64,000 bases of DNA from Antechinus flavipes. Taxonomy: Eukaryota. Numbering within the stretch: the first letter of the stretch is position 1; the number at the start of each line of letters is the position of its first letter. This document shows, piece by piece, positions 48,237-64,000 of the stretch. Under the pieces are notes generated by a model. It had not been told where the DNA came from. It saw nothing but the letters and a program-made list of their open reading frames with translations, and did no database searches. Position numbers and translations under genes: made by a program. Location of the stretch: contig NC_067403.1 in NCBI RefSeq assembly GCF_016432865.1, positions 241,180,001 through 241,244,000 on the forward strand. The letters run 5' to 3'.

Positions 48237-48298
48237 ATGGTACAGAAGAAGAAGATTTGCCCTCGGTTACTGGACTACCTAGTGATCATTGGGGCCAG
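48237..48298 (+). CDS. MADD: MADD first coding exon (exon probably from 48148)
   Basis: 62 nt, [20 protein letters not shown]. Missed by the ORF track because it is short. Confidence 0.95.
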
Positions 48299-51200
48299 GT
48301 AACATTATAGGGGTTGCTCTTCTAGACTGTGGACATTGCCCCACCCCTTCCTCCTTGTAAACATTTTATTGAAGTGGTGTGTTTTTTACATTGTTGTCAC
48401 TTCCCCATGATTCCTCCCCCCCTCCTCCCCCCCCCTGCAGACAAGAAAGCTCTTTTAGAACAAAGAAGTACAGTTAAGCCCATCAGATCCATACATTGTT
48501 TATGCCCATTTCCTCTGGGCAAGCTGGAAGGCCTAGCACTTTTTTCATTCTTGCTCATGTTAAGTTGCGTCTCATTTTCACTGTGCTCTTTCATCCTGGC
48601 TGGGAAACTGAGGCTGGAAAGGAAAGCACTGAAAAGAGTAAGAGTATCGATACATAGAAATAGATCCTAGCACAAGGGTTCTTAACCTGAGGTAAGAGCT
48701 CATGAGCTTGTTTTTACAATATTTTGATAATTATGTTTCAATATAATTGAATTTGTAATTTTATGTATTTTGTTGTATGCATTTAAAACATTATTCTAAG
48801 AAGTGATCCACTGACTTTACTGAACTTCCATAAAGATCCCGAAAAAAAAAAAGGTGAAGAAGCCCTAGTCTACTAGCTTTATGATTCGGACCAAGTTACT
48901 CTATTTTTTCATATTTCTGTTTCATTATCTTGCAAGAGGAAAATGTTAGGTGTTCCATTTGTATCTCTAAATGGTCTTTTTGTAATTCATGAGCAAGCAA
49001 GGGGATCTTGCACTATGAGCTTCTCAAGCACAACTGTGTTAACTTTTTCCCCTTTCCCCATGGAGTTCAGGGTCTCTGGAAGGGTCTGTGTGTGATAAAT
49101 GTGGATCCCCTAACACTGGGGACCCCAGTTAGCCAAGCCAGGCAGCACATCTAAGATTTTCCAGGTTTGTGTCTAAAACAGAAGCATGAGTTTAATTTAT
49201 TGATGAATAATAACAGGACTGGGAGCTGGCTCTTTAAGGCTTGTAGAATGCTTTACAGATGGGACTTCATTTAATCTTTATAACAGTCCTGTGGGATAGG
49301 TCTCTGAGCGTCATAGTCACCATTTTACAGATGCGGAAATAGAAGTTCAGTGGCGTGCCAGGCGGTATTTAAACCCACATCTTCACGACTCTAAACCTGA
49401 CCTAGACCTACCAGGCTACTCTGCCTCTGCTGCCATGTGATGATTAAAACTGGGCAGGCCCTCGGGTCCCTGTGTCCTCTAAGGGTGACCTGGCTGGTTT
49501 TATGCTCCTCAGGCAACCAAGCAGCGACAGCGTGGCCCAGACCCCAGAGTTGCTCCGACGCTACCCTTTGGAGGACTACCCTGAATTCCCCCTCCCTCCG
49601 GACGTGGTGTTCTTCTGCCAGCCGGAGGGATGCCTGAGTGTGCGGCAGCGGCGCATGAGCCTGCGGGATGACACTTCCTTTGTCTTCACCCTCACTGACA
49701 AGGACACTGGGGTCACGCGCTATGGCATCTGTGTCAACTTCTACCGCTCCTTCCAGAAGCGAATGCCCAAAGAAAAGGGGGATGGTGGCCCCGGACACCG
49801 TGCAAAGGAAGCTACCAAGGCTGCTCCCGCTCCAGAGGAGGCAAGCGCAGAGAAGTCGGAGGGTGGCCCTTCCTTGCAGCCCCCCAGTTCTGACTCGACC
49901 CCTGATGGGAACCAGTCTCCCCGGGGCAAACGCCGGGCAAAGGGGGGAAGCCGTTCCCGCAACAGCACCCTGACATCCCTGTGCGTGCTCAGCCATTATC
50001 CTTTCTTCACGACTTTCCGAGAGTGTCTATATACCCTCAAGCGTTTGGTGGACTGTTGCAGTGAGCGACTGCTTGGCAAGAAACTGGCCATCCCCCGAGG
50101 GGTACAGAGGTACAGGGGTGCCATTGACCCAACCCTACTTCCAGGAGGTGCAGAGGGGATGTGTTTGGGGCTTAACCATAGCTGATGACCAGAGGGTGGG
50201 AGGGATGGCACTTGTTCTTTTGTAAAGGTCTCCCTTGGTCTGGTTGAATCTGGGATTAAAGGCAGATCTGGACACATTTAACCCATGTGCATGAGGCTCC
50301 TTGTAAAGTAGAAGGGTTTAAGAGACTTGAGTTCTCTACAGCATTCCCCTTTGGAAAAGAGGCAATGAATTTTATGTGGAAGGTGGGCAGCAGAGCAGGT
50401 GATCATCAATAATTGTCACTCCTTCTTAACCAGCTTCTTCCTGGGGTCAGACAATGACTAAAAACAGGGAGAGGCCATTCTAAGTACCCATCTCCTCTCC
50501 TTTAGATGCTTTAGGTTGCAGTGGGATAGTCAATCAGCATTTGTTAAACACCTACTATGTTCCAGGCTAAGCACTGGGGATATAAAGGAAGTCAAAAGGC
50601 AGTCCTTGCTCTCCAGGGGCCTGAGTAGGGGTCTTTTTTCTCCTGTTTGCATCTCAGGGACACCATGTGGCGCATCTTCACGGGCTCGCTCCTGGTAGAA
50701 GAGAAATCCAGTGCCCTTCTGCATGACCTGCGTGAGATCGAAGCGTGGATCTATCGATTGTTGCGCTCTCCAGTGCCCATATCTGGCCAGAAGCGAGTGG
50801 ACATTGAAGTTCTCCCCCAGGAGCTACAGCCCGCTCTGACCTTTGCCCTCCCTGACCCATCTCGATTCTCTCTGGTAGATTTCCCATTGCATCTGCCTTT
50901 GGAACTCCTGGGTGTGGACGCCTGTCTGCAGGTGTTGTCTTGCATCTTGCTGGAGCACAAGGTAAGAGAGCCATTCCTGTGGGGGAGAAAGAGAGAGATA
51001 GAGACACTCTCAAGGATGGCGCTAAAAACTTACTAATTAGGTGATTTTTCCATAGACTATGGCCTAGGAAAGGAAAGAGGTCTAGGAACAAGGTTATTGA
51101 AGCAAAGAAATGTACTGGAAAAGAATTACTGAGGTCTCCGAGAAAGTCAGGAAACCTTTCTGGGAGCTGGGAGGGTAATTCGGGCATAGTGAGAAAGAAC

Positions 51201-52467
51201 TAGGATTTGTGGGTGGCAGGCAGGCGTCTCCTCGATCTTATGCCGAGATGCAGATTGTTCTTGGATGGCTCCGTGGCAGGTGGTGTTACAATCGCGAGAC
51301 TACAACGCACTCTCCATGTCTGTGATGGCATTTGTAGCAATGATCTATCCCCTGGAGTATATGTTTCCTGTTATTCCCTTGCTTCCTACTTGCATGGCGT
51401 CTGCAGAGCAGGTGAGTCTCCTTGTGGCTTTTGGCTCTTTCACCCGTTGTCCCCCCTTATAACTGGCTCTAAGGGAGAAAGACTCAAAGAACGGGAAGTT
51501 GTGGAGGCAGTATGATCTTTGATAAAATTCTGTCTCAGTGTCTGGGACCGACTGGGTGGGAGTGTGTTTTCTGTTTCTCATTCTCTGTGTTCCACCCACA
51601 GTTGCTTCTGGCTCCTACTCCTTATATTATTGGGGTCCCTGCCAGCTTCTTCCTCTACAAACTAGACTTCAAGATGCCAGATGATGTTTGGCTGGTGGAT
51701 CTGGACAGCAACCGGGTGAGACATCTGGCTGGGGATGCTGGCATTGTCCAGGTGGAACCGTACTTTTTGTGTGCAACCTGTATCTGAGCTAGTCTTTGGG
51801 GGTCACTAGTTGAACAAGTTAAAAAACATTCCTTCTGCTTTATTAACTGGCATGAAAGTAGTGCAAATGAAAGACCCTTGATCTTGTCCTAATGGGTACA
51901 GTGACCAGCTTCTCCCCAGAATTAGGTGCTTCCCCCCCTCCTTTGAGAGCTATCAGGCAGTGATGACTGTTAGGGAATCCTAATGTAGTCCTTGATTGCA
52001 GCATTTAAACCTCCTAATTATAAAGGTGAGGCAATGGGCCTAGAGAGGGGAAGAGACTTACCTTGCAACACATACACAAGTAGAAGCAATCCTCTCATGG
52101 CTTATCTTGGAACCTGGAATAGTAGACATCTGTGTCACCTTTTGGTACAGATTCTGCGAGGGAACTTGTGCCTCAAGATTCTCAATATTGGAGTTGGTGA
52201 CCTCACTCCAGGCAGCCAGGCCCATAAACACTTTTGTTCAGCAAACATTTACTCAGGCCCTTTTTTTGTGAGGTTCTTATTAGTGTGAATAAGAAATTTC
52301 CTTAAATGACTGAATCCTTGAATTCTCACTACTCAGAATTACAAGGGGCAGCTAGCTGGTACAGATCACCAGCCCTGAAGTCAGGAGGACCTGAATTCAA
52401 ATCCAACTTCAGACACTTAACACTTCCTAGCTGTGTGACCCTGGGCAAGTCTCAATTGCCTCAGCAC

Positions 52468-52504
<37 letters not shown>

Positions 52505-55500
52505 TGAGTAGGAGGAATTCCACAGATAAAGACAAGAAGGAATATCAGCTTACATTTAGGTAATGTTTTACAAAGCTTTTTGGCTGACCTTTATTTTTAT
52601 TTTTTTATTTCCTTTTTAAAAAATACACACAAAGATAGTTTTCAGCATTCCTTCTTGTAAAACCATGTGTTCCATATTTTTCTCCCTACCTCCTCCCTCC
52701 CCTAGGCAGTAAGCCATCCAAAATAGGTTAAACATGTGCAATTATTCTAAGCTTATTTCCACACTTATCTTTTGGCTGATCTCTAAATCACCCTGGTGAA
52801 GCAGAAGGCATCATTTTCCCCACTTTCCACACTAGGAAACAGGGTCAGAGGCGAAGTGGCCTGCCCGTGGTCTCACACCTAGTCACTGTCAGGGTAGGAA
52901 TTTGAATCCTGCTGTTTTGGCCCCAGATGTCAGACTCTCTACTAATTGATCTTTTGGTAAGGAGCTTCCAAAAGAAGCTTTTGACACATTCTGAAACAGT
53001 CACTATGCTCTGCCTGTTATAGGTGATCGCACCAACTAATGCAGAGGTGTTGCCCGTCCTGCCAGAGCCCGAATCCTTAGAACTGAAAAAGCACTTGAAG
53101 CAGGTGAGTTGGGGGAGGACAAGGGAGGGTCTGCTGGAGGGGGACAGAGCTCCAGGAAACAACCTCCATCCTTAGGGCAGGAAATCAGTATCATCTTCAG
53201 TCTAGCTTCTCTTAGTGTCCTTCCTGTCCTGTGCATATGCTCTCCTGTCTAATATGCTCCTTACAAACAATCTGTTCTTGTTTCTCTGCTGTTTGCATGG
53301 CCTTGGAACTACTGCTGACTCAAGTCATGTGTAGGTCTGGATTTTGACTCGGTGAAATGCCTTCTCTCATAGACGCTTTTCATGGGGTCTTTTCCTCTTA
53401 AACGCCAGGTCTCTGTAGTGTCTTTCCTTCAGAAACTCCTTTCCTGGTTTGGTCCATTCCACCCATTTTTCATTGGTTTCTGTTCTTCCTCCTCCTACAC
53501 GCTGCATGCAGTACTTGAAGGTAACATGTGTGAATTCCCCGTCTTGAGCTTTGTTGTGCTTGTTCTCAGGGGCCATCCCCAGGAGGCCGTGCTTCTCACG
53601 CAGCTCTTCATAACTCCCCTCCCCTTCCTTGTGTTAGCTGAGGCATTTGGTGGTAGTTCTCAGTGATAGCAGTGTCGTTTTAAATGGGTCACCCTATATC
53701 CTCCATCGCTTTTCCCCCGTTTCCCTGCTGGTGACGTTATATGATCTGCCCTTTGTCGCAGGGGCCAGTGAAGGTGAGTGCAAGGCGTGCTCCAGCAGTT
53801 TTCTCCTGATGTTTCTTCACCACTGGTGACTTTTTAGCAGGCATCACGAGGGAGAAATTAAGAAAGAGGGATACGAAAATAAGTATGTTCAAATATTGAT
53901 GGAAGCCAGAGCTAGCCTTATCCCATGGGGGCTCATTGAGATTTCAGCTTTGGTGATTATAGATGACTTAATTAGGAATCTCTGTACTCTTAGAAGAGGT
54001 GTCTGTATGATGGATTATCTTCCACATATTTTGATTTATATTTCAGGACAGAGATTTTTGGGTTAGTTGGGTCACAAATGTATCGTCTGTAGTTTGTGAG
54101 GACAGTCCTCTCCACAAGCCTCTACTAACCCAGGCTAGAATAAAAGACAGAGACACTGATTCTGAAGAGGCCCTTTCCCAGTCGAAAACTGTTTATTTCC
54201 CAGGATTCTCTCCGTGATAAAATGCCTTTTATTCCACAGGCACTGGCCAGCATGAGTCTGAATACTCAGCCTATCCTCAACTTGGAGAAGTTCCATGAGG
54301 GCCAAGAGATCCCACTACTCTTGGGAAGACCACCCAGTGATTTGCAATCCACACCTTCCACTGAATTCAATCCCCTCATCTATGGCAATGATGTAGATTC
54401 AGTGGATGTGGCTACCAGGTGAGATCAAGCAGGCCTGTATGGGGAAGAGTTCTTGAACTGGGTCTCCTTCGTGCTTTAGACAAACTTGGAGCCTGGGTAT
54501 TTTTAATATGTAAAATTGGAATTATAATATTGGCTTTTACCTGCTCACTTTAAAGTTTCTTATTGCCAAGATAAGAAGAAATAGTTTAAAAAAAAAAAGG
54601 AAGTGGTTTGGAATAGCAGATAGGTTATCACCAGACCTTTTAGGTACATCAGAGCACATAGTGTGCATGTTCAAAATACATGCAAAGGTAGCATCTACCC
54701 TTGCAAAATTTTGTGTTACAAATTTTTCTCTCTTCTTTCCCTCTCCTTCCTCCTCTAAACTGCAAATAATCTTTTCTTTTCTTTTCTTTTCTTTTTTGTA
54801 TTATTATAGTTTTTTATTGACAGAACATATGCATGGGTAATTTTTCAACATGGATCCTTGCAATCACTTCTGTTCCAGCTTTTCCCTTCCTTCTCTCAAG
54901 CCCCACCTCCCCTAGATGGCAGGCAGTCTCATACATGTTAAATATGTTAAAGTATATCTTAAATACAATATATGTGTATATATTTATACAGTTCTCTTGT
55001 TGCACGAGAAAAATCGGATTTAAAAAGGTAAAAACCTGGAAAGAAAAACAAAAATGCAAGCATAGACTGCAAATAATCTAATATAGGTTACACATGTGTA
55101 ATTCTCCTAAATATATTTCCATATTTCTCATGCTGTACCAAAAAAAAATCAGATCAAAAGGGGAAAAAAATGAGGAAGAAAAAGAAACAACAAAGATAAA
55201 AATACTGTGTTGTGATCCATATTCAGTCTCCATAGTCCTCTCCCCAGATGCGAATGGTTCTTTCCATCACAAATCTATTCATCTGAGCACTTATTAAGAG
55301 CTGCTATATGCTAATATTGTGCTGGATGCTGAGGGCACAAAGATAGAATGTAGCACCATTCTTGCTGCCAGGAAGATATCCTAAGGGAGACACATCATAG
55401 CCTCCCTTAAGCACAGTGGGCCAGGCAGGGAGCAAGGATTGTGGGGCAAAGGGGAGATCCAGATTAGACACAGTGCTCAGGACCATCTGAGGAAGGAGAA

Positions 55501-58500
55501 TTAGGTGGGAGAATTAGAAGGAGGAAGATAAGGAGGAAGTAGCACCTAGGCAGAGTCTTAAGTGATAATGAAGATTCTCAAAGGTGAAAGTGAGGTACAT
55601 TCCAGGCAAGTGGAGGGGAGCATGGTCTGCATGATGGGATGGGGCAGACGCCACCATATTCCAGTTTGGGTGAAAGGGAGTAATATGACAAAGATTGGGA
55701 AGCTAGCTTGGAGGCCATATTGGGAAGGCTTAAAAGTCAGGATATAGTAGGGAGCTCCTGAAGATTTTTGATCAGGAGAGTGATAGGGTTAAACTTGTTA
55801 AGATGATATTGGCAGCTATGGAAAATTGTATTTCTTTAAAGGAAGAATGCCAGCACAGATACAATTCACTTCCCATAGGATATCCACTCATTAGGCTCTC
55901 ACATTTAACAGAGTAACTAAATTAATGGTTATAGATTATCTAAAAACTATGACTTGGAGGACCAAGTCCTCCTTTTCCACCATTCTGAGTACTATTGAAG
56001 AAGAAGAAGGGGGTCACTGAAGAAGGGGGAGGAATAATCTTATTTTAAAGGAAATGAAGTGGCATTATCGCCAAATGGAAGACTGACTTATAAGCTCTCT
56101 TAGGAGGAGCCAACAAAGGAATTAGCCAAGTTGGTTTTCACCTGAGTTCAAAAGCAGTGAGAGATTTCATTTGGGGAATATTTGGTTACTGAATATTCAT
56201 AGTAAATCATTGCAGAAAAAACCCCATGAAAATAATTGAAGCTTATAGGGGAAGACAGCATATGTATATGCATGTGTATATATGTATGTTTAGAATTAAA
56301 GATCAAGAGAAGCCAAAGACTTGTAGGTTACAGAGAAATCTCATAGCTATACATCATGAGTACTTGCTTTAAGAAACTAATTAGAAAGGTGGGCAGCTAG
56401 ATAGAGCACCTGTCTCAGAATTAGGAGGGCTTGAGTCCAAATCTGGACTCACACCTCGCACTTCCTAGCTATTTGACGCTGAGCAAGTCATCTAATCCTG
56501 TTTGCCTCTGTTTCCTCATCTGTAAAATAAGCTGGAAAAGGAAACGGCAAACCACGCCATTATTTTTGCCAAGACTTTAAATGAATCAATAATGGTTAGA
56601 CACAGAAAATAACTAAAATTACACAAACAACATCTCTCAAAAGAAAAGTGAATATAATTAACTATTGTCCTATATACCTACTTTCCCCATTTATGTCATT
56701 TTTATAAGAGTAATCTACATGAATGTTGAGGGCATCTTTGATGAGATTATCAGAAGGAAATGGGGAGGCTTTCATCAGTGATAATCCATGAATAGACTAT
56801 GATTAGGCTTTTATCATCACACAGTTGCAGGACAGATGTGATACTACTGTAAGACTATAAGAGGACATTTGTACAATAAAGCAAAATTTCATCTTTTGAA
56901 AGGCTCTTTTCCAACAAGATCTTTCCTATATATATGTCAGGATTATACAAAATTCTTTAGAAGATATAACAGAGAACTTGATTTGACTTTCCTTTGATCA
57001 TTAATGTCAGACACATGCTCCACAGAGAAGAAATAGTGGAAGATAGAAGGGTCTGATGGGCTATGTTTGATGGGATCATGAGGAATTGGACACAATTGAA
57101 CAGTTGAGAAACAAAAATATGGTCATTCTTTAAAGAATGAAAAAAATGTCATTCAGGGGGCAATACAGAAAAACATGGTGATTAAGAGAAGGCTGTAACA
57201 TATTATGAACAAGTAATTACAAAGATGAAAAGAAGTAAAGGGTGTTTTCAAAGAAGTGTGTGAGCAAAAAAATGAGTGAGTTGGTCACCTGGTGAGTTCA
57301 AGAAATAATGGATAGATTTTGTGTTTCATTGGATTCTTGGGATAATAAGAGAAATTTAGGAAGGCCTCAGCACTTATAAGAGGATATGGACAAGAGTGAT
57401 CTATGATGGGCATGTGTGGGTGGGCTATGATATGAACTGGTGGAAGGGATGTCTGTATCAGGAACATTACGGTTATATTTGTATATCTAACTGAAAAGTG
57501 AATTAAATATAATATTAAGAATGGAAACTGAGAGACCAATTGGAGGCTTTTATAGTATTCTAGGCAAAAGGTGATGAAGACCTGAATCTGAACTAGAGTG
57601 GTATCCTAGTCTGAAAGGAAAAGAGATAGAAACTAGATTTTTAGAAAGAATCAATAGGAATTTGTTGCTGATTGAATCTTCTCTTTTTTCATCTCTGTAT
57701 CCAAAAGAAGATTCTGAGATTTCAAATCAGTACCTTGAAGAAGGTCAATATTCATCATCAAAAATAGCTATTTGGAGAAGGGTAGGTTTAGGGAGAAAGA
57801 AGAATTCCATTTTTTTACATGGTAAATTGAGTTGGATTTAAGGTGCTGGTGCAAAAATCTCAGTAATGTGCAGCAGATAGGTGAGGATGTTGGATTGGAG
57901 TTAAGGGGGAAAATCAGCTCTATATACATGGATATATACATACATACATTTAGGAGTCATCCACATGGTAGTACTAACTGAACCCTTGAATAGTGTGAAA
58001 CCCAAGGTAGAGAATATAGAGAACAGATCCTTGGGGAACAGCCTTGTTTAATAGCTGATTAATCAGCAGTAGCTACTGAGGAGAAGACAGACAGGTAGGA
58101 TGAGAGGAAGGCATTGCTCTGGGAGTCATGGGAGGAGAGAGTATCTGACAAAAAGTGTTGAAAGCTACAGAAATGCAAGGAGGTTAAAGATGAAGAAAAG
58201 GCCATTGGAGTTCTCCATCTTGAAATGATTGGGAACCTTCAAGAGAGCAGTGCCTGTAGAATAGTGATGGTGGAAACTTGATTTCAAGGGCCTAAAGAGT
58301 GAGTAGATGATGAGAAATTATAGGCAGTGAGTACATATGACTGTTAGTGAAAGGGATGAGCTACGGGAGAATAGCTTGGGGGATGAGAGGGGTCAAAAAG
58401 TGATTTTTTTTAAGGACATATAAACCTGAACTTATTTGGGGGTTGGGGTTGACAAGTGGCTCATTCTTCTTCACGACTGGTTGTGGCTAAGGAGCAGCCT

Positions 58501-61500
58501 TAGGGGATTGCCAACAACCTTGGAGTCTAAAGGTTCTTCCTCCGTAGGGTGCTGGATGAATCATATAACCCACTGTCATCTGTCTTTTCAGGGTGGCCAT
58601 GGTGAGATTCTTCAACTCCCCCAATGTGCTTCAGGGTTTCCAGATGCACACACGCACTCTGCGTCTCTTTCCCCGACCTGTGGTAGCTTTCCAAGCTGGC
58701 TCCTTTCTAGCCTCACGTCCCCGACAGACCCCCTTTGCTGAGAAATTGGCCAGGACCCAAGCCGTGGAGTACTTTGGTGAATGGATCCTCAACCCCACCA
58801 ACTATGCTTTCCAGCGAATCCACAACAGTGAGTGCAGCTGCCCTTTCCCCGGGGCCCCTTCCCTTTCTCTCTCTTTCTGCCTCCTTTTTTTACCCTGCTT
58901 GTGCCCTGCCCTGTTCTTCATTGTTTGCTCCTTTCTGGCCTTGTCCTGTCTGCTGCCAACCCTGACCAGTCACGTCTCTCTGGGCAGACATGTTCGACCC
59001 GGCCCTGATTGGCGACAAGCCCAAGTGGTACGCCCACCAGCTGCAGCCGATCTATTACCGTGTCTATGACAGTAACTCCCAGCTGGCCGAGGCCCTGAGC
59101 GTGCCGCCCGAGCAGGACTCTGACTCTGACCCAACTGACGACAGGTGAGCAGTGCCTGGGGGGCAGCGAAGGCCGGTGGGCCATGACGGGCCCCCGGGCC
59201 CTGGGCAGGATGGTGCTTGCCTCCTCCTCCTCTAAGTGCCAGTAGGGCCAGGAGGTCGCCCTGCTTTCTAGCCTCCGTCCTGAGCTCTCAGAGTCTCTTT
59301 TCTGCACCCCTCCCACCTTGGGCACCAACAACTTTCTCTTGGGCTTCTCCCTCTTGACTTGGCAGTGGCAGTGACAGTGTGGATTACGATGATTCAAGCT
59401 CTTCCTACTCATCCCTTGGTGACTTTGTTAGTGAGATGATGAAATGTGATATCAACGGTGACACACCTAGTAAGTGCCAGGAAGCGGGCCAGCCCCGGGC
59501 AGGAGCTGGGGTTTGGGGTGGAGGGTCTGTGCCCTCTGAGCCCTGGAATCTTTGCAGATGTGGATCCACTAACACATGCAGCACTGGGTGACGCCAGCGA
59601 GGTGGCATTTGATGAGCTGCAGGGAAACCAGGGAGATTTGGAGGAACCCGGCCCAGACAGCGAGAATTCCCAGGACAACCCCCAGCCTCGTTCCAGCTCC
59701 AGCACGACGGCCAGCAGCAGCCCCAGTACCATCATTCACGGAGCCAATGCTGTGCGTAGGGCTGTGGAAGGGAAGAATGGAGCTAGGGCTAGGATCTGGG
59801 CCCCTTCTTGTGGGACAGTGACAGTACCTGGTTCCTTCCTCAGTGTTAGACTGGACTGGGTCTCTCTCATCCTTCTCCCTGTATCCTGTGTTTAAGTGTG
59901 GACTGTGGCTTAAAGGTTGCTCCTTAAAGGCTGCTCCTTCTAGGCTGCTTGTAAGTCTGTGACTGAAGCCCCGTTTTCACAGATCTCTGGGGAAGAAACA
60001 TCATTAGGGTGAGGATGTCAGAGACTTTTCCCTATAGATATTTCCCATCAAAGCCCTGACATTAGGAACCTGCCTGGGGCTGGCTAGATTTTTGGTCAGA
60101 GGAGAACGCCAGAAGCCTCAGTCCTCCTCCCCTGACCATTGTGTGCCACGACCCGCAGGAATCTGCCGATTTTACCGAGGTGGAGGACAAGACAGCGACA
60201 GGATTCTCCAACCCCCTCCGTGCTTTGCCTCCCAGTTTTGGCAAATTAAGTTTGGATAAGCGTGAGGCAGAGAGTGGGGGCCCCCCAGAGGGATTGGGGC
60301 GCAGGCGCGACTATGACAATCCATACTTTGAACCTCAGTATGGATTTCCCACTGAGGAAGATGAAGATGAAGATGAGCAGGAGGAGAGTTATACCCCACG
60401 ATTTCAACAAAACCTCAATGGCAGTAGGTGAGAGTTTGGGTTACTTTTGTGGGTGTGCCCACTAAAGAGCTTTTCAAAGGGCCTCTTACCGGCACTGGCC
60501 AGGGTGGGGAGGAGAATCAGAAAGGTCCATCAGTTGGAAGGTTCTCATGGTTCTGCTGTTCTCCTGGCATAGGGGTTTGGGGTCAGTTGGGGGCTGGTTG
60601 TAGCAACGTAGCTGGGCTCTGTACTTCTCCAAAGGTGAGGTACCTTGGCCTGGACCTGACAAGTGCCACTGTGCGTTTCCAAGGGCTCAAAAACTGCTGC
60701 GACCCAATAGCCTCAAGCTGGCAAGCGATTCAGATGCAGAGTCGGACTCTCGGGCAAGTTCTCCCAACTCCACCGTCTCCAACAACAGCAGCAATGAGGG
60801 CTTCGGGGGCATCATGTCTTTTGCCAGTAAGTGTCATGAGTTATGTGGATTTTTAAAAAAATGTACATGCCTTATATAGAGTTACTTAATCAATGTTGAT
60901 TGAATTAGATTAAATTGAATTCCTCACCTGTCCCATCCTCTACATCCATGGTTGGGCTATAATTGAGGCAAAAGTTATGTAGAAGTTCTTCTCTGGAGTT
61001 TGGGTGACACTCTCAGGCCACAGGGAGATTTTGGTCATAGATCATTGCCAGACTCACATTGTTCTAAGGAAGGGGGAGGTAAGTGGAACTGTAGGAAGAC
61101 TGCCTGTGTATGTTTGGCATACAGATAGCCCTTAAATTCTTTTTTGTTCATTCATTTATTTGTTCATTTGGACCTTTGGTGTTCACTGGAAACAAAATAG
61201 TTGCATGTTTACCTAAGATAGATCCTCAAAGGAGACATCTCGCCATATCCATCAGTTTCTTTTGCGTGGTTCAGATGCCTTAGTCAAGCTGGATTGGGAT
61301 ATAAACTCACTTCTTTTTCTTTGGAAAATTTCATCTTGTGTCTTGTTTTTTCATCACATACATTTCTGAATATATTCTTCTTCCCTCTACCTCCTCATTT
61401 TCTACCCAGTCCTTGGTAACAAAGGTTAAAAAAGAAAGGCATAAAAGTGGTTCACCAAAACTCATCAGCCCACCTGCCACATATGACCACATATGACATA

Positions 61501-63153
61501 CCCATGTGACAGGGTATGCAGCATTCCATACAGAGTCCCTATTTCTGCAGGGAAGGGCAGGAGGAGCATCTTCTCTCTTTTCTGAACCAAGCTGATTATT
61601 ATAATTGCACAACATTCGTTCTTTGTGTTTATTGCTTTTCTGGTTCTATCTACTTATCCCTGTGCCAAATCTCTGTGCCCCAGCGCTTCCCTAATTCTTC
61701 ATCTCTGCCGTTCTCATGGTGCACTGACATCCCCCCACATTCACCGGGCTCAGTTTGTTTGGCCACTTCCTAATTGGTGGCAGCCACTTTATTTCTAGTC
61801 CACCATGACTACAAAAAATGCGTGGGACCATATACCTCTGTGGTATATATTTCCTAGCAGCAGGATCTCTGGGTAGAGATATTTTAGTTACTTTAGAAGC
61901 TGAATTTCATTCCTTTCTAGAAGGATTGGAGTGAATCTCCATCAATACTGCTCTGCCAGTAGTGAATTGGTATGTCTGCTTTCCTGCAGACCTTCTGACA
62001 CTGACTCTTTCCATTCCTGATTATCCCGGTCAATTTGCTGAACCTAAAGTGAAAAGTTAGAGTTTTGTTGATTTTCATTTCTCTTATTATTTGTGGTTTG
62101 GAGCATGTGCTATGACATGTTTATTTTCTTATTCCTCCTTTCATATTGTGGGTCATAGAGGGGAGTTTTTATTTGGAAAATGGTTTGCGCTTCTTCTTTA
62201 ATCACTTATGAATTGGAAAAATGTCTAACCCTTTCTTTGCTTAGTGAAGAAGTTTTTAATGACTTTGGAGGGTGTATATGGACCTACGTTTGGTATATAG
62301 AGAAGGGCGTTATGGGGGAGTAATGTAGCTTGATGGCTGGTAGTAGATTTAGAAAGGAAACCCAAGCAATGAGTACTGTTGTGAGATCAATCAGACGCTA
62401 GGACAGTCCTTCATCTAGAACCATTGCCATTCTAATTGTCTTTCTATGGCCTACTGGCTATATGGGGAGATTTCACTGATCATTTTAGGTCAAGCTGATG
62501 ACTATGTCTTATTTTGTTATAAACAATAGCAGAAAAGCATGACCCAATAGAATTTCCATTTTGCCTGCCTCTAGGCTTGACCTTGTTTAGGTTAGATAAG
62601 AAACCCTGGGATAGACAATAGGTGGTGCAGTAGGTAGAGTACCAAACCTGGAGTCAGGAGGACTCATCTTCCTGAGTTCAAATCCAGCCTCATTTACTTG
62701 CTGTGTGATCTGAGTAAGTCACTTCCCCCTGTTTGCCTCAGTTCTTCATCTGTACGGTGAGCTAGAGAAGGAAATGGCCTACCACTCCAGTATCTTTGCC
62801 AAATAAAACCCCAAATGGGTTTACAAAGAGCTGAATATGACTGAAACAACTGAACAGTAGCAACCACAGACATAATAAGTAAGATGAACTGGACTTTGAA
62901 GGTCAGACTGTCTTTAAGAAGGAAGTGGGGCTGATTAAAAAAATGGCCGTCATGAGATGGGGAAGAGTGGTTTAACATATTCTAAACTTTGAAAGTATAC
63001 TGCCATGTCTCTGATCCTCATGACCCCTTGTTCTAACCCTCTTCCTTGTAGGCAGCCTCTACCGGAACCACAGCACCAGCTTCAGCCTCTCAAACCTTGC
63101 GCTGCCCACCAAAGGGGCCAGAGACAAAACAACACCCTTCCCTAGTCTCAAAG
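48237..63153 (+). CDS. MADD: MAP kinase-activating death domain protein (DENN-domain Rab3/Rab27 GEF), 5' partial, about 891 codons in window
   Basis: join(48237-48298,49513-50109,50658-50961,51280-51411,51602-51715,53023-53103,54240-54418,58592-58827,58988-59144,59366-59469,59558-59751,60159-60427,60684-60826,63052-63153) with consistent phases. [16 protein letters not shown] start; uDENN/cDENN/dDENN sequence. The gene continues beyond 64000. Confidence 0.98.
49513..50109 (+). CDS. MADD: MADD exon (uDENN)
   Basis: 597 nt, [21 protein letters not shown]...IPRGVQ. Confidence 0.98.
50658..50961 (+). CDS. MADD: MADD exon
   Basis: 304 nt, DTMWRIF...LLEHK. Confidence 0.98.
51280..51411 (+). CDS. 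MADD: MADD exon
   Basis: 132 nt, [11 protein letters not shown]...ASAEQ. Confidence 0.98.
51602..51715 (+). CDS. MADD: MADD exon
   Basis: 114 nt, [13 protein letters not shown]...DSNR. Confidence 0.98.
52345..52501 (+). mobile_element. Marsupial SINE with an intact 34-nt poly(A) tail
   Basis: Same head and core as above; A-run at 52468-52501. Confidence 0.8.
53023..53103 (+). CDS. MADD: MADD exon
   Basis: 81 nt, [27 protein letters not shown]. Confidence 0.97.
53512..53520 (+). other. Candidate 9-nt MADD microexon (YLK)
   Basis: Pyrimidine tract, then TGCATGCAG|TACTTGAAG|GTAACA; phase 0-0 inside a phase-0 intron. Confidence 0.5.
53762..53773 (+). other. Candidate 12-nt MADD microexon (GPVK)
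   Basis: TGCCCTTTGTCGCAG|GGGCCAGTGAAG|GTGAGT; phase 0-0 with a near-consensus donor. Confidence 0.55.
54240..54418 (+). CDS. MADD: MADD exon
   Basis: 179 nt, [10 protein letters not shown]...DVAT. Confidence 0.97.
54660..55275 (-). mobile_element. Older L1 3' fragment interrupted by a younger L1 insertion (54773-55065)
   Basis: 14-bp TSD ACTGCAAATAATCT at 54759-54772 and 55066-55079; (TTTTC)n tail. Confidence 0.75.
55830..57100 (+). mobile_element. Degraded RTE-like LINE interrupted by a Mar1-type SINE (56391-56630)
   Basis: Decayed RT-like segment at about 56720-56850; the SINE carries an RTE-type 3' end (GCTGGAAAAGGAAACGGCAAACCAC). Confidence 0.45.
58592..58827 (+). CDS. MADD: MADD exon (dDENN)
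   Basis: 236 nt, VAMVRFFNS...FQRIHN. Confidence 0.97.
58988..59144 (+). CDS. MADD: MADD exon
   Basis: 157 nt, [20 protein letters not shown]...TDD. Confidence 0.96.
59366..59469 (+). CDS. MADD: MADD exon
   Basis: 104 nt, [20 protein letters not shown]...GDTP. Confidence 0.96.
59558..59751 (+). CDS. MADD: MADD exon
   Basis: 194 nt, [15 protein letters not shown]...HGANA. Confidence 0.95.
60159..60427 (+). CDS. MADD: MADD exon 13 equivalent (including the 13L part)
   Basis: 269 nt, ESADFTE...[13 protein letters not shown]...NGS. Confidence 0.94.
60684..60826 (+). CDS. MADD: MADD exon
   Basis: 143 nt, [22 protein letters not shown]...IMSFA. Confidence 0.96.
62625..62860 (+). mobile_element. 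Mar1-type SINE
   Basis: tRNA head, CORE and RTE-like tail (GAGCTAGAGAAGGAAATGGC...CTGAAACAACTGAACA). Confidence 0.75.
63052..63153 (+). CDS. MADD: MADD exon
   Basis: 102 nt, [15 protein letters not shown]...PFPSLK. Confidence 0.96.
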
Positions 63154-64000
63154 GTAACCAATTAGAGTGCTTGAGCAATGATGGTGGAGACGGGGAGGGG
63201 TCTGAGTGTTGGATGGAGGCTATCCTGGGCCATTTTGTCTGGCCGTGGTCTCCACACATAAATTCTTGCATCTTCCTCTGCTCGGCACAGGCTGTAGTAT
63301 ATTGAGGGTTGTCAGGTAGATGTGGCTCTTAGCTCAAGGCTCAGGTAAGGCTACTCTGGGACGTTCCTCCTGTCATAAATAACCCCAGCATTTATTTAGC
63401 ATAGGGCCTGGCTCATCAAAAGCACCACTGGAGAGGTAGATAAGGGTGTTAGACTAGGAGTTAGGAAAACTTGAGTTTATTCCTGCCTCAGATGCTAGCT
63501 CTGTGATCGTGTGCAGGTCACTTACCCTCTCTCAGCCTCAGTTTAATTTGTAAAATGTTTATGATAATAGTGCCTACCTCACAAGGAGGTTATGAGGATG
63601 ATATCACTTTTCTGTAAAGTGCTTTGCAAACCTTAAAATGCATACAAATGCTGCTCTTATTGTCATGGTTGTCATCATCTTCGTCTGAATGAGAGATGGG
63701 CCAGCTATTTGCCATATTCCATGTTCAGAATTTCAGAGGAGCTGCTGGGAGGGCAGTGGCTGCTGAGAAGGTCGGGAAACCTCTTGGTTTGGCTTCTTGC
63801 CATTTCAGAGTTGGCCAAAGCCTGGTAGTTGGTTTGCTTCTGCTTGGAGTTCTGATGGTTAGGAAATAGCAGTGGTAACTAACAGTCTGAGTGGGTCTCC
63901 GGGTTTTCCTGGATATTGGGCCCAGGATACTGGGATTAGGCCAGATTGAGAAGGGATCTGACATATCCCCGAACTGGGAGAAAACAAAGGGAAATTGGAA

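What the first reader, a model, noticed from the sequence alone, without database searches (positions are those of the whole stretch)
53705..53779. Second candidate microexon (12 nt, GPVK) 241 nt downstream, forming a tandem microexon pair in MADD
Seen: extended pyrimidine tract (CTTTTCCCCCGTTTCCCTG), branch-like GTGAC at 53731, TGC at -15 to -13, then CTTTGTCGCAG|GGGCCAGTGAAG|GTGAGT. The exon is phase 0-0 and has a near-perfect donor. The stretch 53500-53880 keeps several CpGs in an otherwise CpG-poor intron and is not a recognisable repeat, which suggests constraint. The resulting introns (408, 241, 466 nt) are all spliceable. Inference: four isoforms are possible (none, YLK, GPVK, YLKGPVK) at one linker between cDENN and dDENN, a combinatorial switch that could tune GEF activity or partner binding.
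Basis: partly seen in the sequence, partly recalled or inferred. Interest (0 to 1): 0.78.

Follow-up and report, generated by a model that had tools for sequence, protein, structure and literature searches.

The report
Candidate marsupial 12-base MADD microexon
A 12-base, frame-keeping stretch with near-perfect splice signals sits in an intron of the MADD gene and is kept in three marsupial lineages but not in placental mammals; it looks like a usable tiny exon, but no RNA evidence could be obtained, so its use is unproven.

Summary
The sequence is exactly as described. The candidate (53762-53773, GPVK) has a pyrimidine tract, a branch-like GTGAC and UGC motifs upstream, and an AAG|GTGAGT donor. 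It is in frame between the MADD exons ending HLKQ (53103) and starting ALASM (54240).

By a simple splice-site scoring matrix it is the only 3-27 nt candidate of this strength in 620 kb scanned; the only other hit is its own Trichosurus orthologue.

The window is marsupial, probably dasyurid. The exon form is kept in Trichosurus (synonymous change) and Dromiciops (GPVR). Rabbit, mole-rat and manatee keep a homologous AG...GTGAGG-like element, but only 6, 6 (or 9 with a stop) and 4 nt long, with unrelated codons. So this is not an ancient coding microexon. The marsupial GTGAGT donor, 6 nt downstream, is absent from all three placentals.

Conservation peaks on the neighbouring 9-nt YLK exon, which is kept in all six species with synonymous changes, not on GPVK.

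None of 342 sampled MADD proteins (56 marsupial) has an insert at this junction. The known 9-nt "ERK" microexon is annotated.

Real marsupial microexon: about 0.4.

The parts
53023..53103 (+). Constitutive MADD exon ending ...LKKHLKQ (phase 0 at its 3' end)
   Evidence: Translation. tblastn with Nannospalax MADD P0002 covers residues 404-430.
53420..53860 (+). Conserved intronic block, alignable between marsupials and placentals. It holds both microexon candidates.
   Evidence: MAFFT of six orthologous introns. Identity profile. CpG observed/expected 0.50. The distance from the end of the YLK exon to the second AG is 239-252 nt in all six species.
53512..53520 (+). 9-nt YLK candidate microexon, the partner of the claimed tandem pair
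   Evidence: AG, 9 nt and GTAA are kept in all six species. Codons are TAC TTG AAG (marsupials), TAC CTG AAG (rabbit), TAT CTG AAG (manatee) and AAC CTG AAG (mole-rat). It lies at the marsupial identity peak of 0.94-0.96.
53679..53691 (+). 13-nt motif TTTAAATGGGTCA, identical in five of six species
   Evidence: blastn match. Alignments.
53709..53729 (+). Pyrimidine tract upstream of the candidate acceptor
   Evidence: Read directly. Pyrimidine-rich in all six species.
53731..53735 (+). Branch-point-like GTGAC. All three marsupials read CTGGTGAC or TTGGTGAC; placentals read CTGCTGAT, TTGCTGAT or CTGCTGAA.
   Evidence: Its function as a branch point is inferred, not shown.
53747..53749 (+). UGC at -15 to -13 of the acceptor. 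A second UGC lies at -36 to -34 (53726-53728).
   Evidence: Every marsupial has at least one UGC within 16 nt upstream of the AG, but not at the same position.
53760..53761 (+). Acceptor AG
   Evidence: CAG or TAG at the homologous position in all six species. Acceptor score 8.6 in the window, 8.6 in Trichosurus and 5.8 in Dromiciops.
53762..53773 (+). Candidate 12-nt microexon GGG CCA GTG AAG (GPVK), phase 0-0
   Evidence: Trichosurus has GGGCCGGTGAAG (GPVK, synonymous change) and Dromiciops has GGGCCGGTGAGG (GPVR).
53768..53773 (+). Internal in-frame donor-like GTGAAG. Using it would give a 6-nt exon at 53762-53767 (GP). It is the homologue of the placental GTGAGG donor.
   Evidence: Donor score is 5.3 in Trichosurus, which has the same hexamer as the window, and 9.1 in Dromiciops, where it is GTGAGG. 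Alignment columns.
53774..53779 (+). Consensus donor GTGAGT, absent from all three placentals
   Evidence: Donor score 12.3. Marsupials have GTGAGT, GTGAGT and GTGAGC. Placentals have ATCGCA, ATTGCA and ATTTCA in this place.
54240..54418 (+). Constitutive MADD exon beginning [10 protein letters not shown]...
   Evidence: Translation. tblastn. It is 100% identical to Antechinus flavipes MADD isoform X4, P0224.

Best explanation
The 12-nt stretch is a lineage-restricted alternative microexon of marsupial MADD, seen so far only in australidelphians. It appears to derive from an older exon-like intronic element.

**Origin.** All six therians compared share three features about 240-250 nt downstream of the conserved 9-nt YLK microexon: a pyrimidine tract, a CTGAY-type branch-like motif, and a YAG followed 4-6 nt later by GTGAGG or a similar hexamer. 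All three marsupials, and none of the three placentals, also have a consensus donor (AAG|GTGAGT) 6 nt further downstream. With it the unit becomes 12 nt, in frame and free of stops.

**Proposed mechanism (inferred).** An exon this short cannot be defined by the ordinary machinery, so most tissues would skip it. It would be included where SRRM3/SRRM4-type activity recognises the UGC-containing 3' splice site region.

**Expected effect.** Inclusion would add G-P-V-K (or G-P through the internal GTGAAG donor). The insert would fall after Q430, inside the strongly conserved segment LKxHLKQ|ALASMSxxxQPIxNL that follows the cDENN-homologous part.

**Shown:** the sequence anatomy, splice-site strength, reading frame, retention in three marsupial orders, and the different state in placentals.

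**Inferred:** that it is spliced in at all, its tissue specificity, its SRRM3/4 dependence, and any effect on Rab GEF activity.
For: - Splice-site scores equal those of the flanking constitutive exons.
- It is the only candidate of this strength in 128 kb of window and, with its own orthologue, in 620 kb. The same scan at looser thresholds recovers a real 27-nt MADD exon.
- It is in frame with no stop.
- Trichosurus keeps AG, 12 nt and GTGAGT with one synonymous change (CCA to CCG). Dromiciops keeps TAG, 12 nt and GTGAGC with one K-to-R change.
- The 80 nt upstream (53664-53743) are 92% identical among marsupials and partly conserved in placentals.
- CpGs are retained in the block.
- UGC motifs lie within 16 nt of the AG in each marsupial.
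- Residues around the junction are invariant from lancelet to mammals, so an insert there should matter.
Against: - There is no RNA evidence.
- 0 of 342 sampled MADD proteins have any insert between HLKQ and ALASM. These include 56 marsupial isoforms and the longest isoforms of seven species.
- The known 9-nt 'ERK' microexon is annotated in 28 of 166 sampled proteins and in 9 of 43 marsupial isoforms.
- The 40-nt bin holding the exon (0.84) is less conserved among marsupials than the upstream block (0.92-0.96) and close to the intron background of about 0.75-0.85.
- The Dromiciops acceptor is weaker, 5.8.
- Placentals lack the coding form.
Confidence: 0.4

Rival explanations
1. It is a splicing-regulatory pseudo-exon rather than a coding exon. 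On this reading the conserved AG...GTGAGG unit, with its pyrimidine tract and branch-like motif, forms part of the downstream regulatory flank of the truly conserved YLK microexon. It would bind U2AF/U2 and U1 and so help, or hinder as a decoy, definition of the 9-nt exon or removal of the intron in two steps. It would rarely or never appear in mature mRNA. The marsupial GTGAGT would simply be a stronger U1 site.
For: - The AG and a GT hexamer 4-6 nt downstream are kept at homologous positions in all six species, while the bases between them are unrelated (GGGCCR against ARTCTG or TCTG).
- The unit sits at a constant 239-252 nt from the YLK exon.
- Conservation peaks on YLK and on 53664-53743, not on the 12 nt.
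- In mole-rat the 9-nt reading carries TAG, and in manatee the unit is 4 nt. A coding role therefore cannot explain the placental conservation.
- No annotated isoform carries an insert.
Against: - All three marsupials keep an open, in-frame 12-nt unit with a synonymous and a conservative change.
- Rabbit and mole-rat keep an in-frame 6-nt spacing.
- No binding or splicing data exist either way.
- Decoy exons have so far been described, to my knowledge, for retained introns, not for microexon neighbours.
Confidence: 0.3
2. It has no function of its own. The splice-like arrangement would be a by-product of sequence drift on the edge of a block that is conserved for other reasons (the YLK microexon and its regulatory flanks). 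Its survival in three marsupials would reflect limited divergence time.
For: - Identity around the exon (0.84) is near the marsupial intron background.
- At about 75-85% neutral identity, retaining four splice-site bases and the frame in two further species is not very improbable.
- RNA folding shows nothing special, z = +1.45.
- No annotation support.
Against: - A near-perfect donor next to a good acceptor with a conserved upstream architecture occurs nowhere else in 620 kb.
- The homologous AG and GT persist across about 160 million years of marsupial-placental divergence (my knowledge), which neutral sequence would not do.
Confidence: 0.25
3. It is an ancient vertebrate or therian coding microexon that is already annotated, that is, real but not novel.
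For: MADD has known neural microexons and is listed as an SRRM4 target (PMC12626424, PMC13387927).
Against: - The published zebrafish madd microexon DreEX0044304 is 9 nt. Its RT-PCR primers map near the C-terminus (GGLLQV ... LNHIKKC, about residue 1540-1565 of P0002), so it is the 'ERK' exon and not this junction.
- 0 of 342 proteins carry an insert here.
- Placental homologues cannot encode GPVK.
Confidence: 0.03

Closest known systems
SRRM3/SRRM4 (eMIC)-dependent neural microexons, 3-27 nt (Irimia et al. 2014; Torres-Mendez et al. 2019; from my knowledge, with PMC12626424 read here)
   Same: Length of 12 nt. Frame-preserving. Strong 5' splice site. UGC motifs close to the 3' splice site behind a long pyrimidine tract. 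The host gene works in vesicle traffic and GTPase regulation. The insert lies next to a folded domain.
   Different: Such microexons are typically ultra-conserved across vertebrates, with conservation peaking on the exon and its flanks. This one has its coding form only in marsupials and is not at the conservation peak. Neural inclusion and SRRM3/4 dependence are untested.
The known 9-nt MADD microexon (VastDB DreEX0044304; inserts ERK before VFIELNHIKK)
   Same: Same gene. Tiny, in-frame cassette. In zebrafish it is neural-enriched and srrm3/4-dependent (PMC12626424, supplementary files).
   Different: It lies about 1100 residues further downstream, close to the C-terminal PH-like domain. It is conserved from fish to human and is annotated in 28 of 166 sampled proteins. 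The candidate here is annotated in none.
The neighbouring 9-nt YLK candidate (53512-53520; scan note s1-192117)
   Same: Same intron, same phase, 241 nt upstream, inside the same conserved block.
   Different: YLK is kept in all six therians with synonymous third-position changes and sits at the identity peak. GPVK is marsupial-only. YLK has weak splice sites (2.0/6.8) and GPVK has strong ones (8.6/12.3).
Decoy or non-productive cryptic exons that regulate splicing (Parra et al. 2018; from my knowledge)
   Same: Conserved splice-site-like signals without conserved coding content. In some species, inclusion would be non-productive.
   Different: Decoy exons are described in retained introns and are usually longer. 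Here the marsupial and rabbit versions are in frame, and nothing is known about intron retention.
Tandem microexons in receptor tyrosine phosphatases PTPRD/PTPRS (meA, meB; from my knowledge)
   Same: Two very small cassettes a short distance apart could combine to give several isoforms at one protein site.
   Different: Those are experimentally established and control ligand binding.

Membership tests
Neural (eMIC/SRRM3-4-dependent) microexon | Exon of 3-27 nt that preserves the reading frame | tested here: met
   12 nt, phase 0-0, no stop.
Neural (eMIC/SRRM3-4-dependent) microexon | Functional-looking 3' and 5' splice sites with a strong donor | tested here: met
   Simple scoring matrix: 8.6 and 12.3 bits. 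Unique in 620 kb apart from its own orthologue. This is sequence evidence only.
Neural (eMIC/SRRM3-4-dependent) microexon | UGC motif(s) shortly upstream of the 3' splice site | tested here: met
   UGC at -15 to -13 and at -36 to -34 in the window. At least one UGC lies within 16 nt in each marsupial, at shifting positions.
Neural (eMIC/SRRM3-4-dependent) microexon | Inclusion in neural or endocrine RNA and skipping elsewhere | not testable with these tools
Neural (eMIC/SRRM3-4-dependent) microexon | Dependence on SRRM3/SRRM4 | not testable with these tools
   Needs a minigene or a knock-down experiment.
Neural (eMIC/SRRM3-4-dependent) microexon | Deep conservation of the exon and its flanks (typical, not obligatory) | tested here: not met
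   The coding form is found only in the three marsupial lineages. Placentals have 6, 6/9 (with a stop) and 4 nt with unrelated codons. Marsupial identity is 0.84 at the exon against 0.94-0.96 at YLK.
Annotated MADD alternative exons | Presence of the insert in a database protein or a published isoform | tested here: not met
0 of 342 proteins with the junction have any insert. The published 9-nt microexon maps elsewhere.
Regulatory pseudo-exon / decoy exon | Conserved splice-site-like signals without conserved coding content | tested here: met
   AG and GTGAGG-like hexamers are kept in six species and the bases between them are unrelated.
Regulatory pseudo-exon / decoy exon | Inclusion would be non-productive | tested here: inconclusive
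   A stop in the mole-rat 9-nt reading and a frameshift in manatee, but in frame in rabbit and in all three marsupials.
Regulatory pseudo-exon / decoy exon | Mutation of the element changes splicing of the neighbouring exon or intron | not testable with these tools
   Needs a minigene.

The most novel reading that the evidence does not exclude
An ancient therian exon-like element (YAG, 4-6 nt, GTGAGG) lies at a fixed distance downstream of the conserved 9-nt YLK microexon. It may have served as a splicing-control pseudo-exon, or as a 6-nt microexon. On the marsupial lineage it would then have become a 12-nt coding microexon through the gain of a consensus donor 6 nt downstream. That would be a traceable case of microexon birth, giving marsupial MADD a tandem microexon pair and up to six isoforms (none, YLK, GP, GPVK, and the two combinations) inside an otherwise invariant motif next to the cDENN domain.
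Probability: 0.15. Interest if true: 0.6.

Novelty: new member of a known kind. Interest (0 to 1): 0.35.

Why it matters
MADD (Rab3GEP) activates Rab3 and Rab27 in regulated secretion. Its splice forms differ between neurons and other cells.

If the exon is used, marsupial MADD carries a lineage-specific 4-residue insert that includes a helix-breaking Gly-Pro. The insert would fall in a segment that is invariant from lancelet to mammals. It would also be a dated example of how a microexon arises from a pre-existing intronic splice-like element.

If it is not used, the conserved AG...GT unit is a candidate regulator of the neighbouring YLK microexon. In either case the practical result is a short, well-defined test: RT-PCR or junction counting across two exons.

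The more robust by-product is that the YLK microexon shows coding-type conservation in six therians, yet is absent from every sampled annotation.

Tried and rejected
1. **RNA evidence.** No letters of 51295-51335 were sent to any search tool afterwards.

2. **Joined-peptide search.** Searching the joined peptide (HLKQ + GPVK + ALASM) was left out. Exon 54240-54416 was searched by reference instead.
   - The 1.84-billion representative library gave 55 hits with no insert.
   - The length-limited search gave 52 short hits. The 17 best-scoring that I printed are genomic exon fragments with intron-derived ends, and none shows the window's own exon sequence.

3. **Isoform sampling** through two region searches and three cluster look-ups gave 342 proteins and no insert.

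4. **The look-up of encoding contigs.**
   - Failed for non-longest isoforms.
   - Two Logan contigs from unknown vertebrates (L005, L006) hold exon 8 but no homologue of the block within 634 and 1914 nt upstream.

5. **Metagenome pattern scan** for the marsupial exon plus donor gave three chance matches, not MADD.

6. **RNA structure.**
   - RNAalifold on six species gave a weak consensus (-11 kcal/mol). Some two-sided changes appear only between the two clades.
   - The window's own fold is no better than shuffles, z = +1.45. I do not claim a structure.

7. **AlphaFold2 model** of residues 1-620 with a 15-sequence alignment failed (mean pLDDT 31), so it was not used.

8. **Literature.** Word-start hits for 'MADD' were mostly Madden, Maddison or the C. 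elegans gene madd-4. No paper describing an insert at this junction was found.

9. **Possible human-derived hits.** Three short protein hits carrying an exon sequence I recall as the human one (P0400, P0402, P0407), possibly human contamination in metagenomes, were not followed to their contigs. No contig that I take for human was fetched.
Full report
**What is there.** The window carries the 5' half of a vertebrate MADD gene. tblastn with a full-length MADD protein (P0002, Nannospalax) places coding exons from 48237 to 63200. Two of them are 53023-53103 (...LKKHLKQ) and 54240-54418 ([10 protein letters not shown]...).

The exons are closest to marsupial MADD: about 91% identity to opossum isoforms against about 80-85% to placentals. 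Both exons flanking the finding are identical to Antechinus flavipes isoform X4. The genome is therefore marsupial, probably dasyurid. An earlier scan note on this genome also says dasyurid.

**The observation.** The exon is phase 0-0 and the introns are 408, 241 and 466 nt.

I scored splice sites with a simple position weight matrix of my own, not MaxEntScan.
- The acceptor scores 8.6 bits and the donor 12.3 bits, as strong as the flanking constitutive exons.
- At those thresholds it is the only AG-N(3-27)-GT unit on either strand of the 64-kb window.
- In 620 kb of window plus fetched loci, the only other hit is its own Trichosurus orthologue.
- Looser thresholds pick up the genuine 27-nt MADD exon VNKNDIRKK in three species, a positive control.

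CpG observed/expected is 0.50 in 53500-53880 against 0.14-0.21 in the rest of the intron. The block is single-copy in the window.

**Comparison with other species.** I fetched five orthologous MADD loci:
- Trichosurus (L002)
- Dromiciops (L003)
- Nannospalax (L001)
- Oryctolagus (L004)
- Trichechus (L007)

. I aligned the intron between the two exons across all six species.

A block of about 430 nt (window about 53420-53860) aligns between marsupials and placentals. That is unusual for intron sequence at this distance.

*The YLK exon.* The 9-nt YLK exon (53512-53520) keeps its AG, its length and a GTAA donor in all six species. Its changes are synonymous:
- TAC TTG AAG in marsupials
- TAC CTG AAG in rabbit
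- TAT CTG AAG in manatee
- AAC CTG AAG in mole-rat (N for Y)

It sits at the marsupial identity peak of 0.94-0.96.

*The GPVK element.*
- Trichosurus has CAG|GGGCCGGTGAAG|GTGAGT (GPVK, one synonymous change).
- Dromiciops has TAG|GGGCCGGTGAGG|GTGAGC (GPVR).
- Rabbit has CAG|AATCTG|GTGAGG, 6 nt.
- Mole-rat has CAGTAG|AGTCTG|GTGAGG, which is 6 nt from the second AG, or 9 nt with an in-frame TAG from the first.
- Manatee has CAG|TCTG|GTGGGC, 4 nt.

The placental donor aligns with the marsupial internal GTGAAG (53768), not with GTGAGT. The consensus donor is absent from all three placentals, and an in-frame 6-nt 'GP' form is also possible in marsupials.

The distance from the YLK exon to this second AG is 239-252 nt in all six species. 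A 13-mer, TTTAAATGGGTCA (53679-53691), is identical in five of the six.

Among marsupials the 40-nt bin holding GPVK is 0.84 identical. That is below the 0.92 of the 80 nt upstream and close to the intron background.

**Annotation and literature.** I did not search the joined peptide. Exon 8 was searched by reference, and isoforms were sampled through region searches and cluster listings.

Of 342 proteins that contain the junction, none has any insert between HLKQ and ALASM. The sample includes:
- the longest isoforms of Nannospalax, Suncus, Talpa, Dromiciops, Elephas, Trichechus and Oryctolagus;
- 56 marsupial isoforms from Antechinus, Sarcophilus, Sminthopsis, Macrotis, Notamacropus, Petaurus, Trichosurus, Dromiciops, Monodelphis and Gracilinanus;
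- echidna isoforms

.

The same sample shows the known 9-nt 'ERK' microexon in 28 of 166 proteins and in 9 of 43 marsupial isoforms. That known exon can be propagated between species by protein homology, whereas an unknown 12-nt exon is easily missed by read aligners. Absence is therefore only weak evidence against use.

The published zebrafish madd microexon (DreEX0044304, 9 nt, neural, srrm3/4-dependent; PMC12626424) maps by its RT-PCR primers to that C-terminal site, not here. MADD is named as an SRRM4 target in PMC13387927. I found no paper describing an insert at this junction.

**RNA evidence.** None. Eighteen probable RNA runs hold about the exonic share of the stretch.

**Protein context.**
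- Pfam DENN covers residues 175-402 of P0224.
- DENND1B and DENND1A structures align up to residues 429-431.
- The junction is after Q430.
- In a 15-species alignment reaching lancelet and shark, A431, L432, S434-S436, Q440-L445 and K429 are invariant.

An insert would therefore split a strongly conserved segment rather than a loose linker. The AlphaFold2 model failed (pLDDT 31) and is not used.

**Reading.** Three explanations remain.

1. *A real, marsupial-restricted microexon, about 0.4.* It would have formed when an older exon-like element gained a consensus donor. It would most likely be skipped generally and included where SRRM3/4-type activity is present.
2. *A conserved splicing-control pseudo-exon, about 0.3.* It would belong to the regulatory flank of the YLK microexon. 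This explains why the AG and GT are kept in placentals while the bases between them are unrelated and sometimes non-productive.
3. *A functionless by-product on the edge of a conserved block, about 0.25.*

An ancient, already annotated coding microexon is excluded for practical purposes.

YLK has coding-type conservation across therians, and GPVK does not. The combinatorial-switch idea is untested.

**Verdict.** If real, this is a new member of a known kind (a lineage-specific microexon). Interest is moderate to low until junction reads or an RT-PCR across 53103/54240 are obtained.

Noticed in passing
window 53512-53520 (L002 5993-6001; L003 6422-6430; L004 5553-5561; L001 7502-7510; L007 9460-9468): The neighbouring 9-nt YLK candidate keeps its AG, its length and a GTAA donor in all six therians compared. 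Its changes are synonymous (TAC/TAT, TTG/CTG), apart from mole-rat NLK. It sits at the conservation peak. Even so, none of the 342 sampled MADD proteins carries it. It looks like the better-supported of the two microexons.
   Followed up: partly
window 53679-53691: The 13-mer TTTAAATGGGTCA is identical in three marsupials, rabbit and mole-rat; manatee differs at two bases. It lies about 70 nt upstream of the second acceptor. RNAalifold pairs GGGTCAC with the downstream GGTGACG or GCTGAT branch-like motif, but the support is weak and the single-sequence fold is unremarkable.
   Followed up: partly
window 53762-53779: Two in-frame donors lie 6 nt apart (GTGAAG, then GTGAGT). A 6-nt 'GP' form is therefore possible beside the 12-nt 'GPVK' form. 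In Dromiciops the two donors score about equally, 9.1 and 8.7.
   Followed up: partly
L001 7758-7776; L007 9717-9730: In mole-rat the homologous unit read from the first AG is 9 nt and starts with an in-frame TAG. In manatee it is 4 nt. Inclusion would be non-productive in both species, which fits a regulatory or decayed element in placentals.
   Followed up: partly
window 53505-53510: The UGCAUG (RBFOX-type motif) that abuts the YLK acceptor is present in all three marsupials and absent at that position in rabbit, mole-rat and manatee. Manatee has one 7 nt further upstream.
   Followed up: no
L002 25359-25385; L004 25883-25909; L007 28307-28333 (downstream MADD, outside the window): The splice-site scan recovers the 27-nt exon encoding VNKNDIRKK, which is present in 329 of 339 long MADD proteins. 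It served as a positive control for the scan.
   Followed up: yes
They lie in or next to the MADD exon at 51277-51414. They were left alone afterwards.
   Followed up: no
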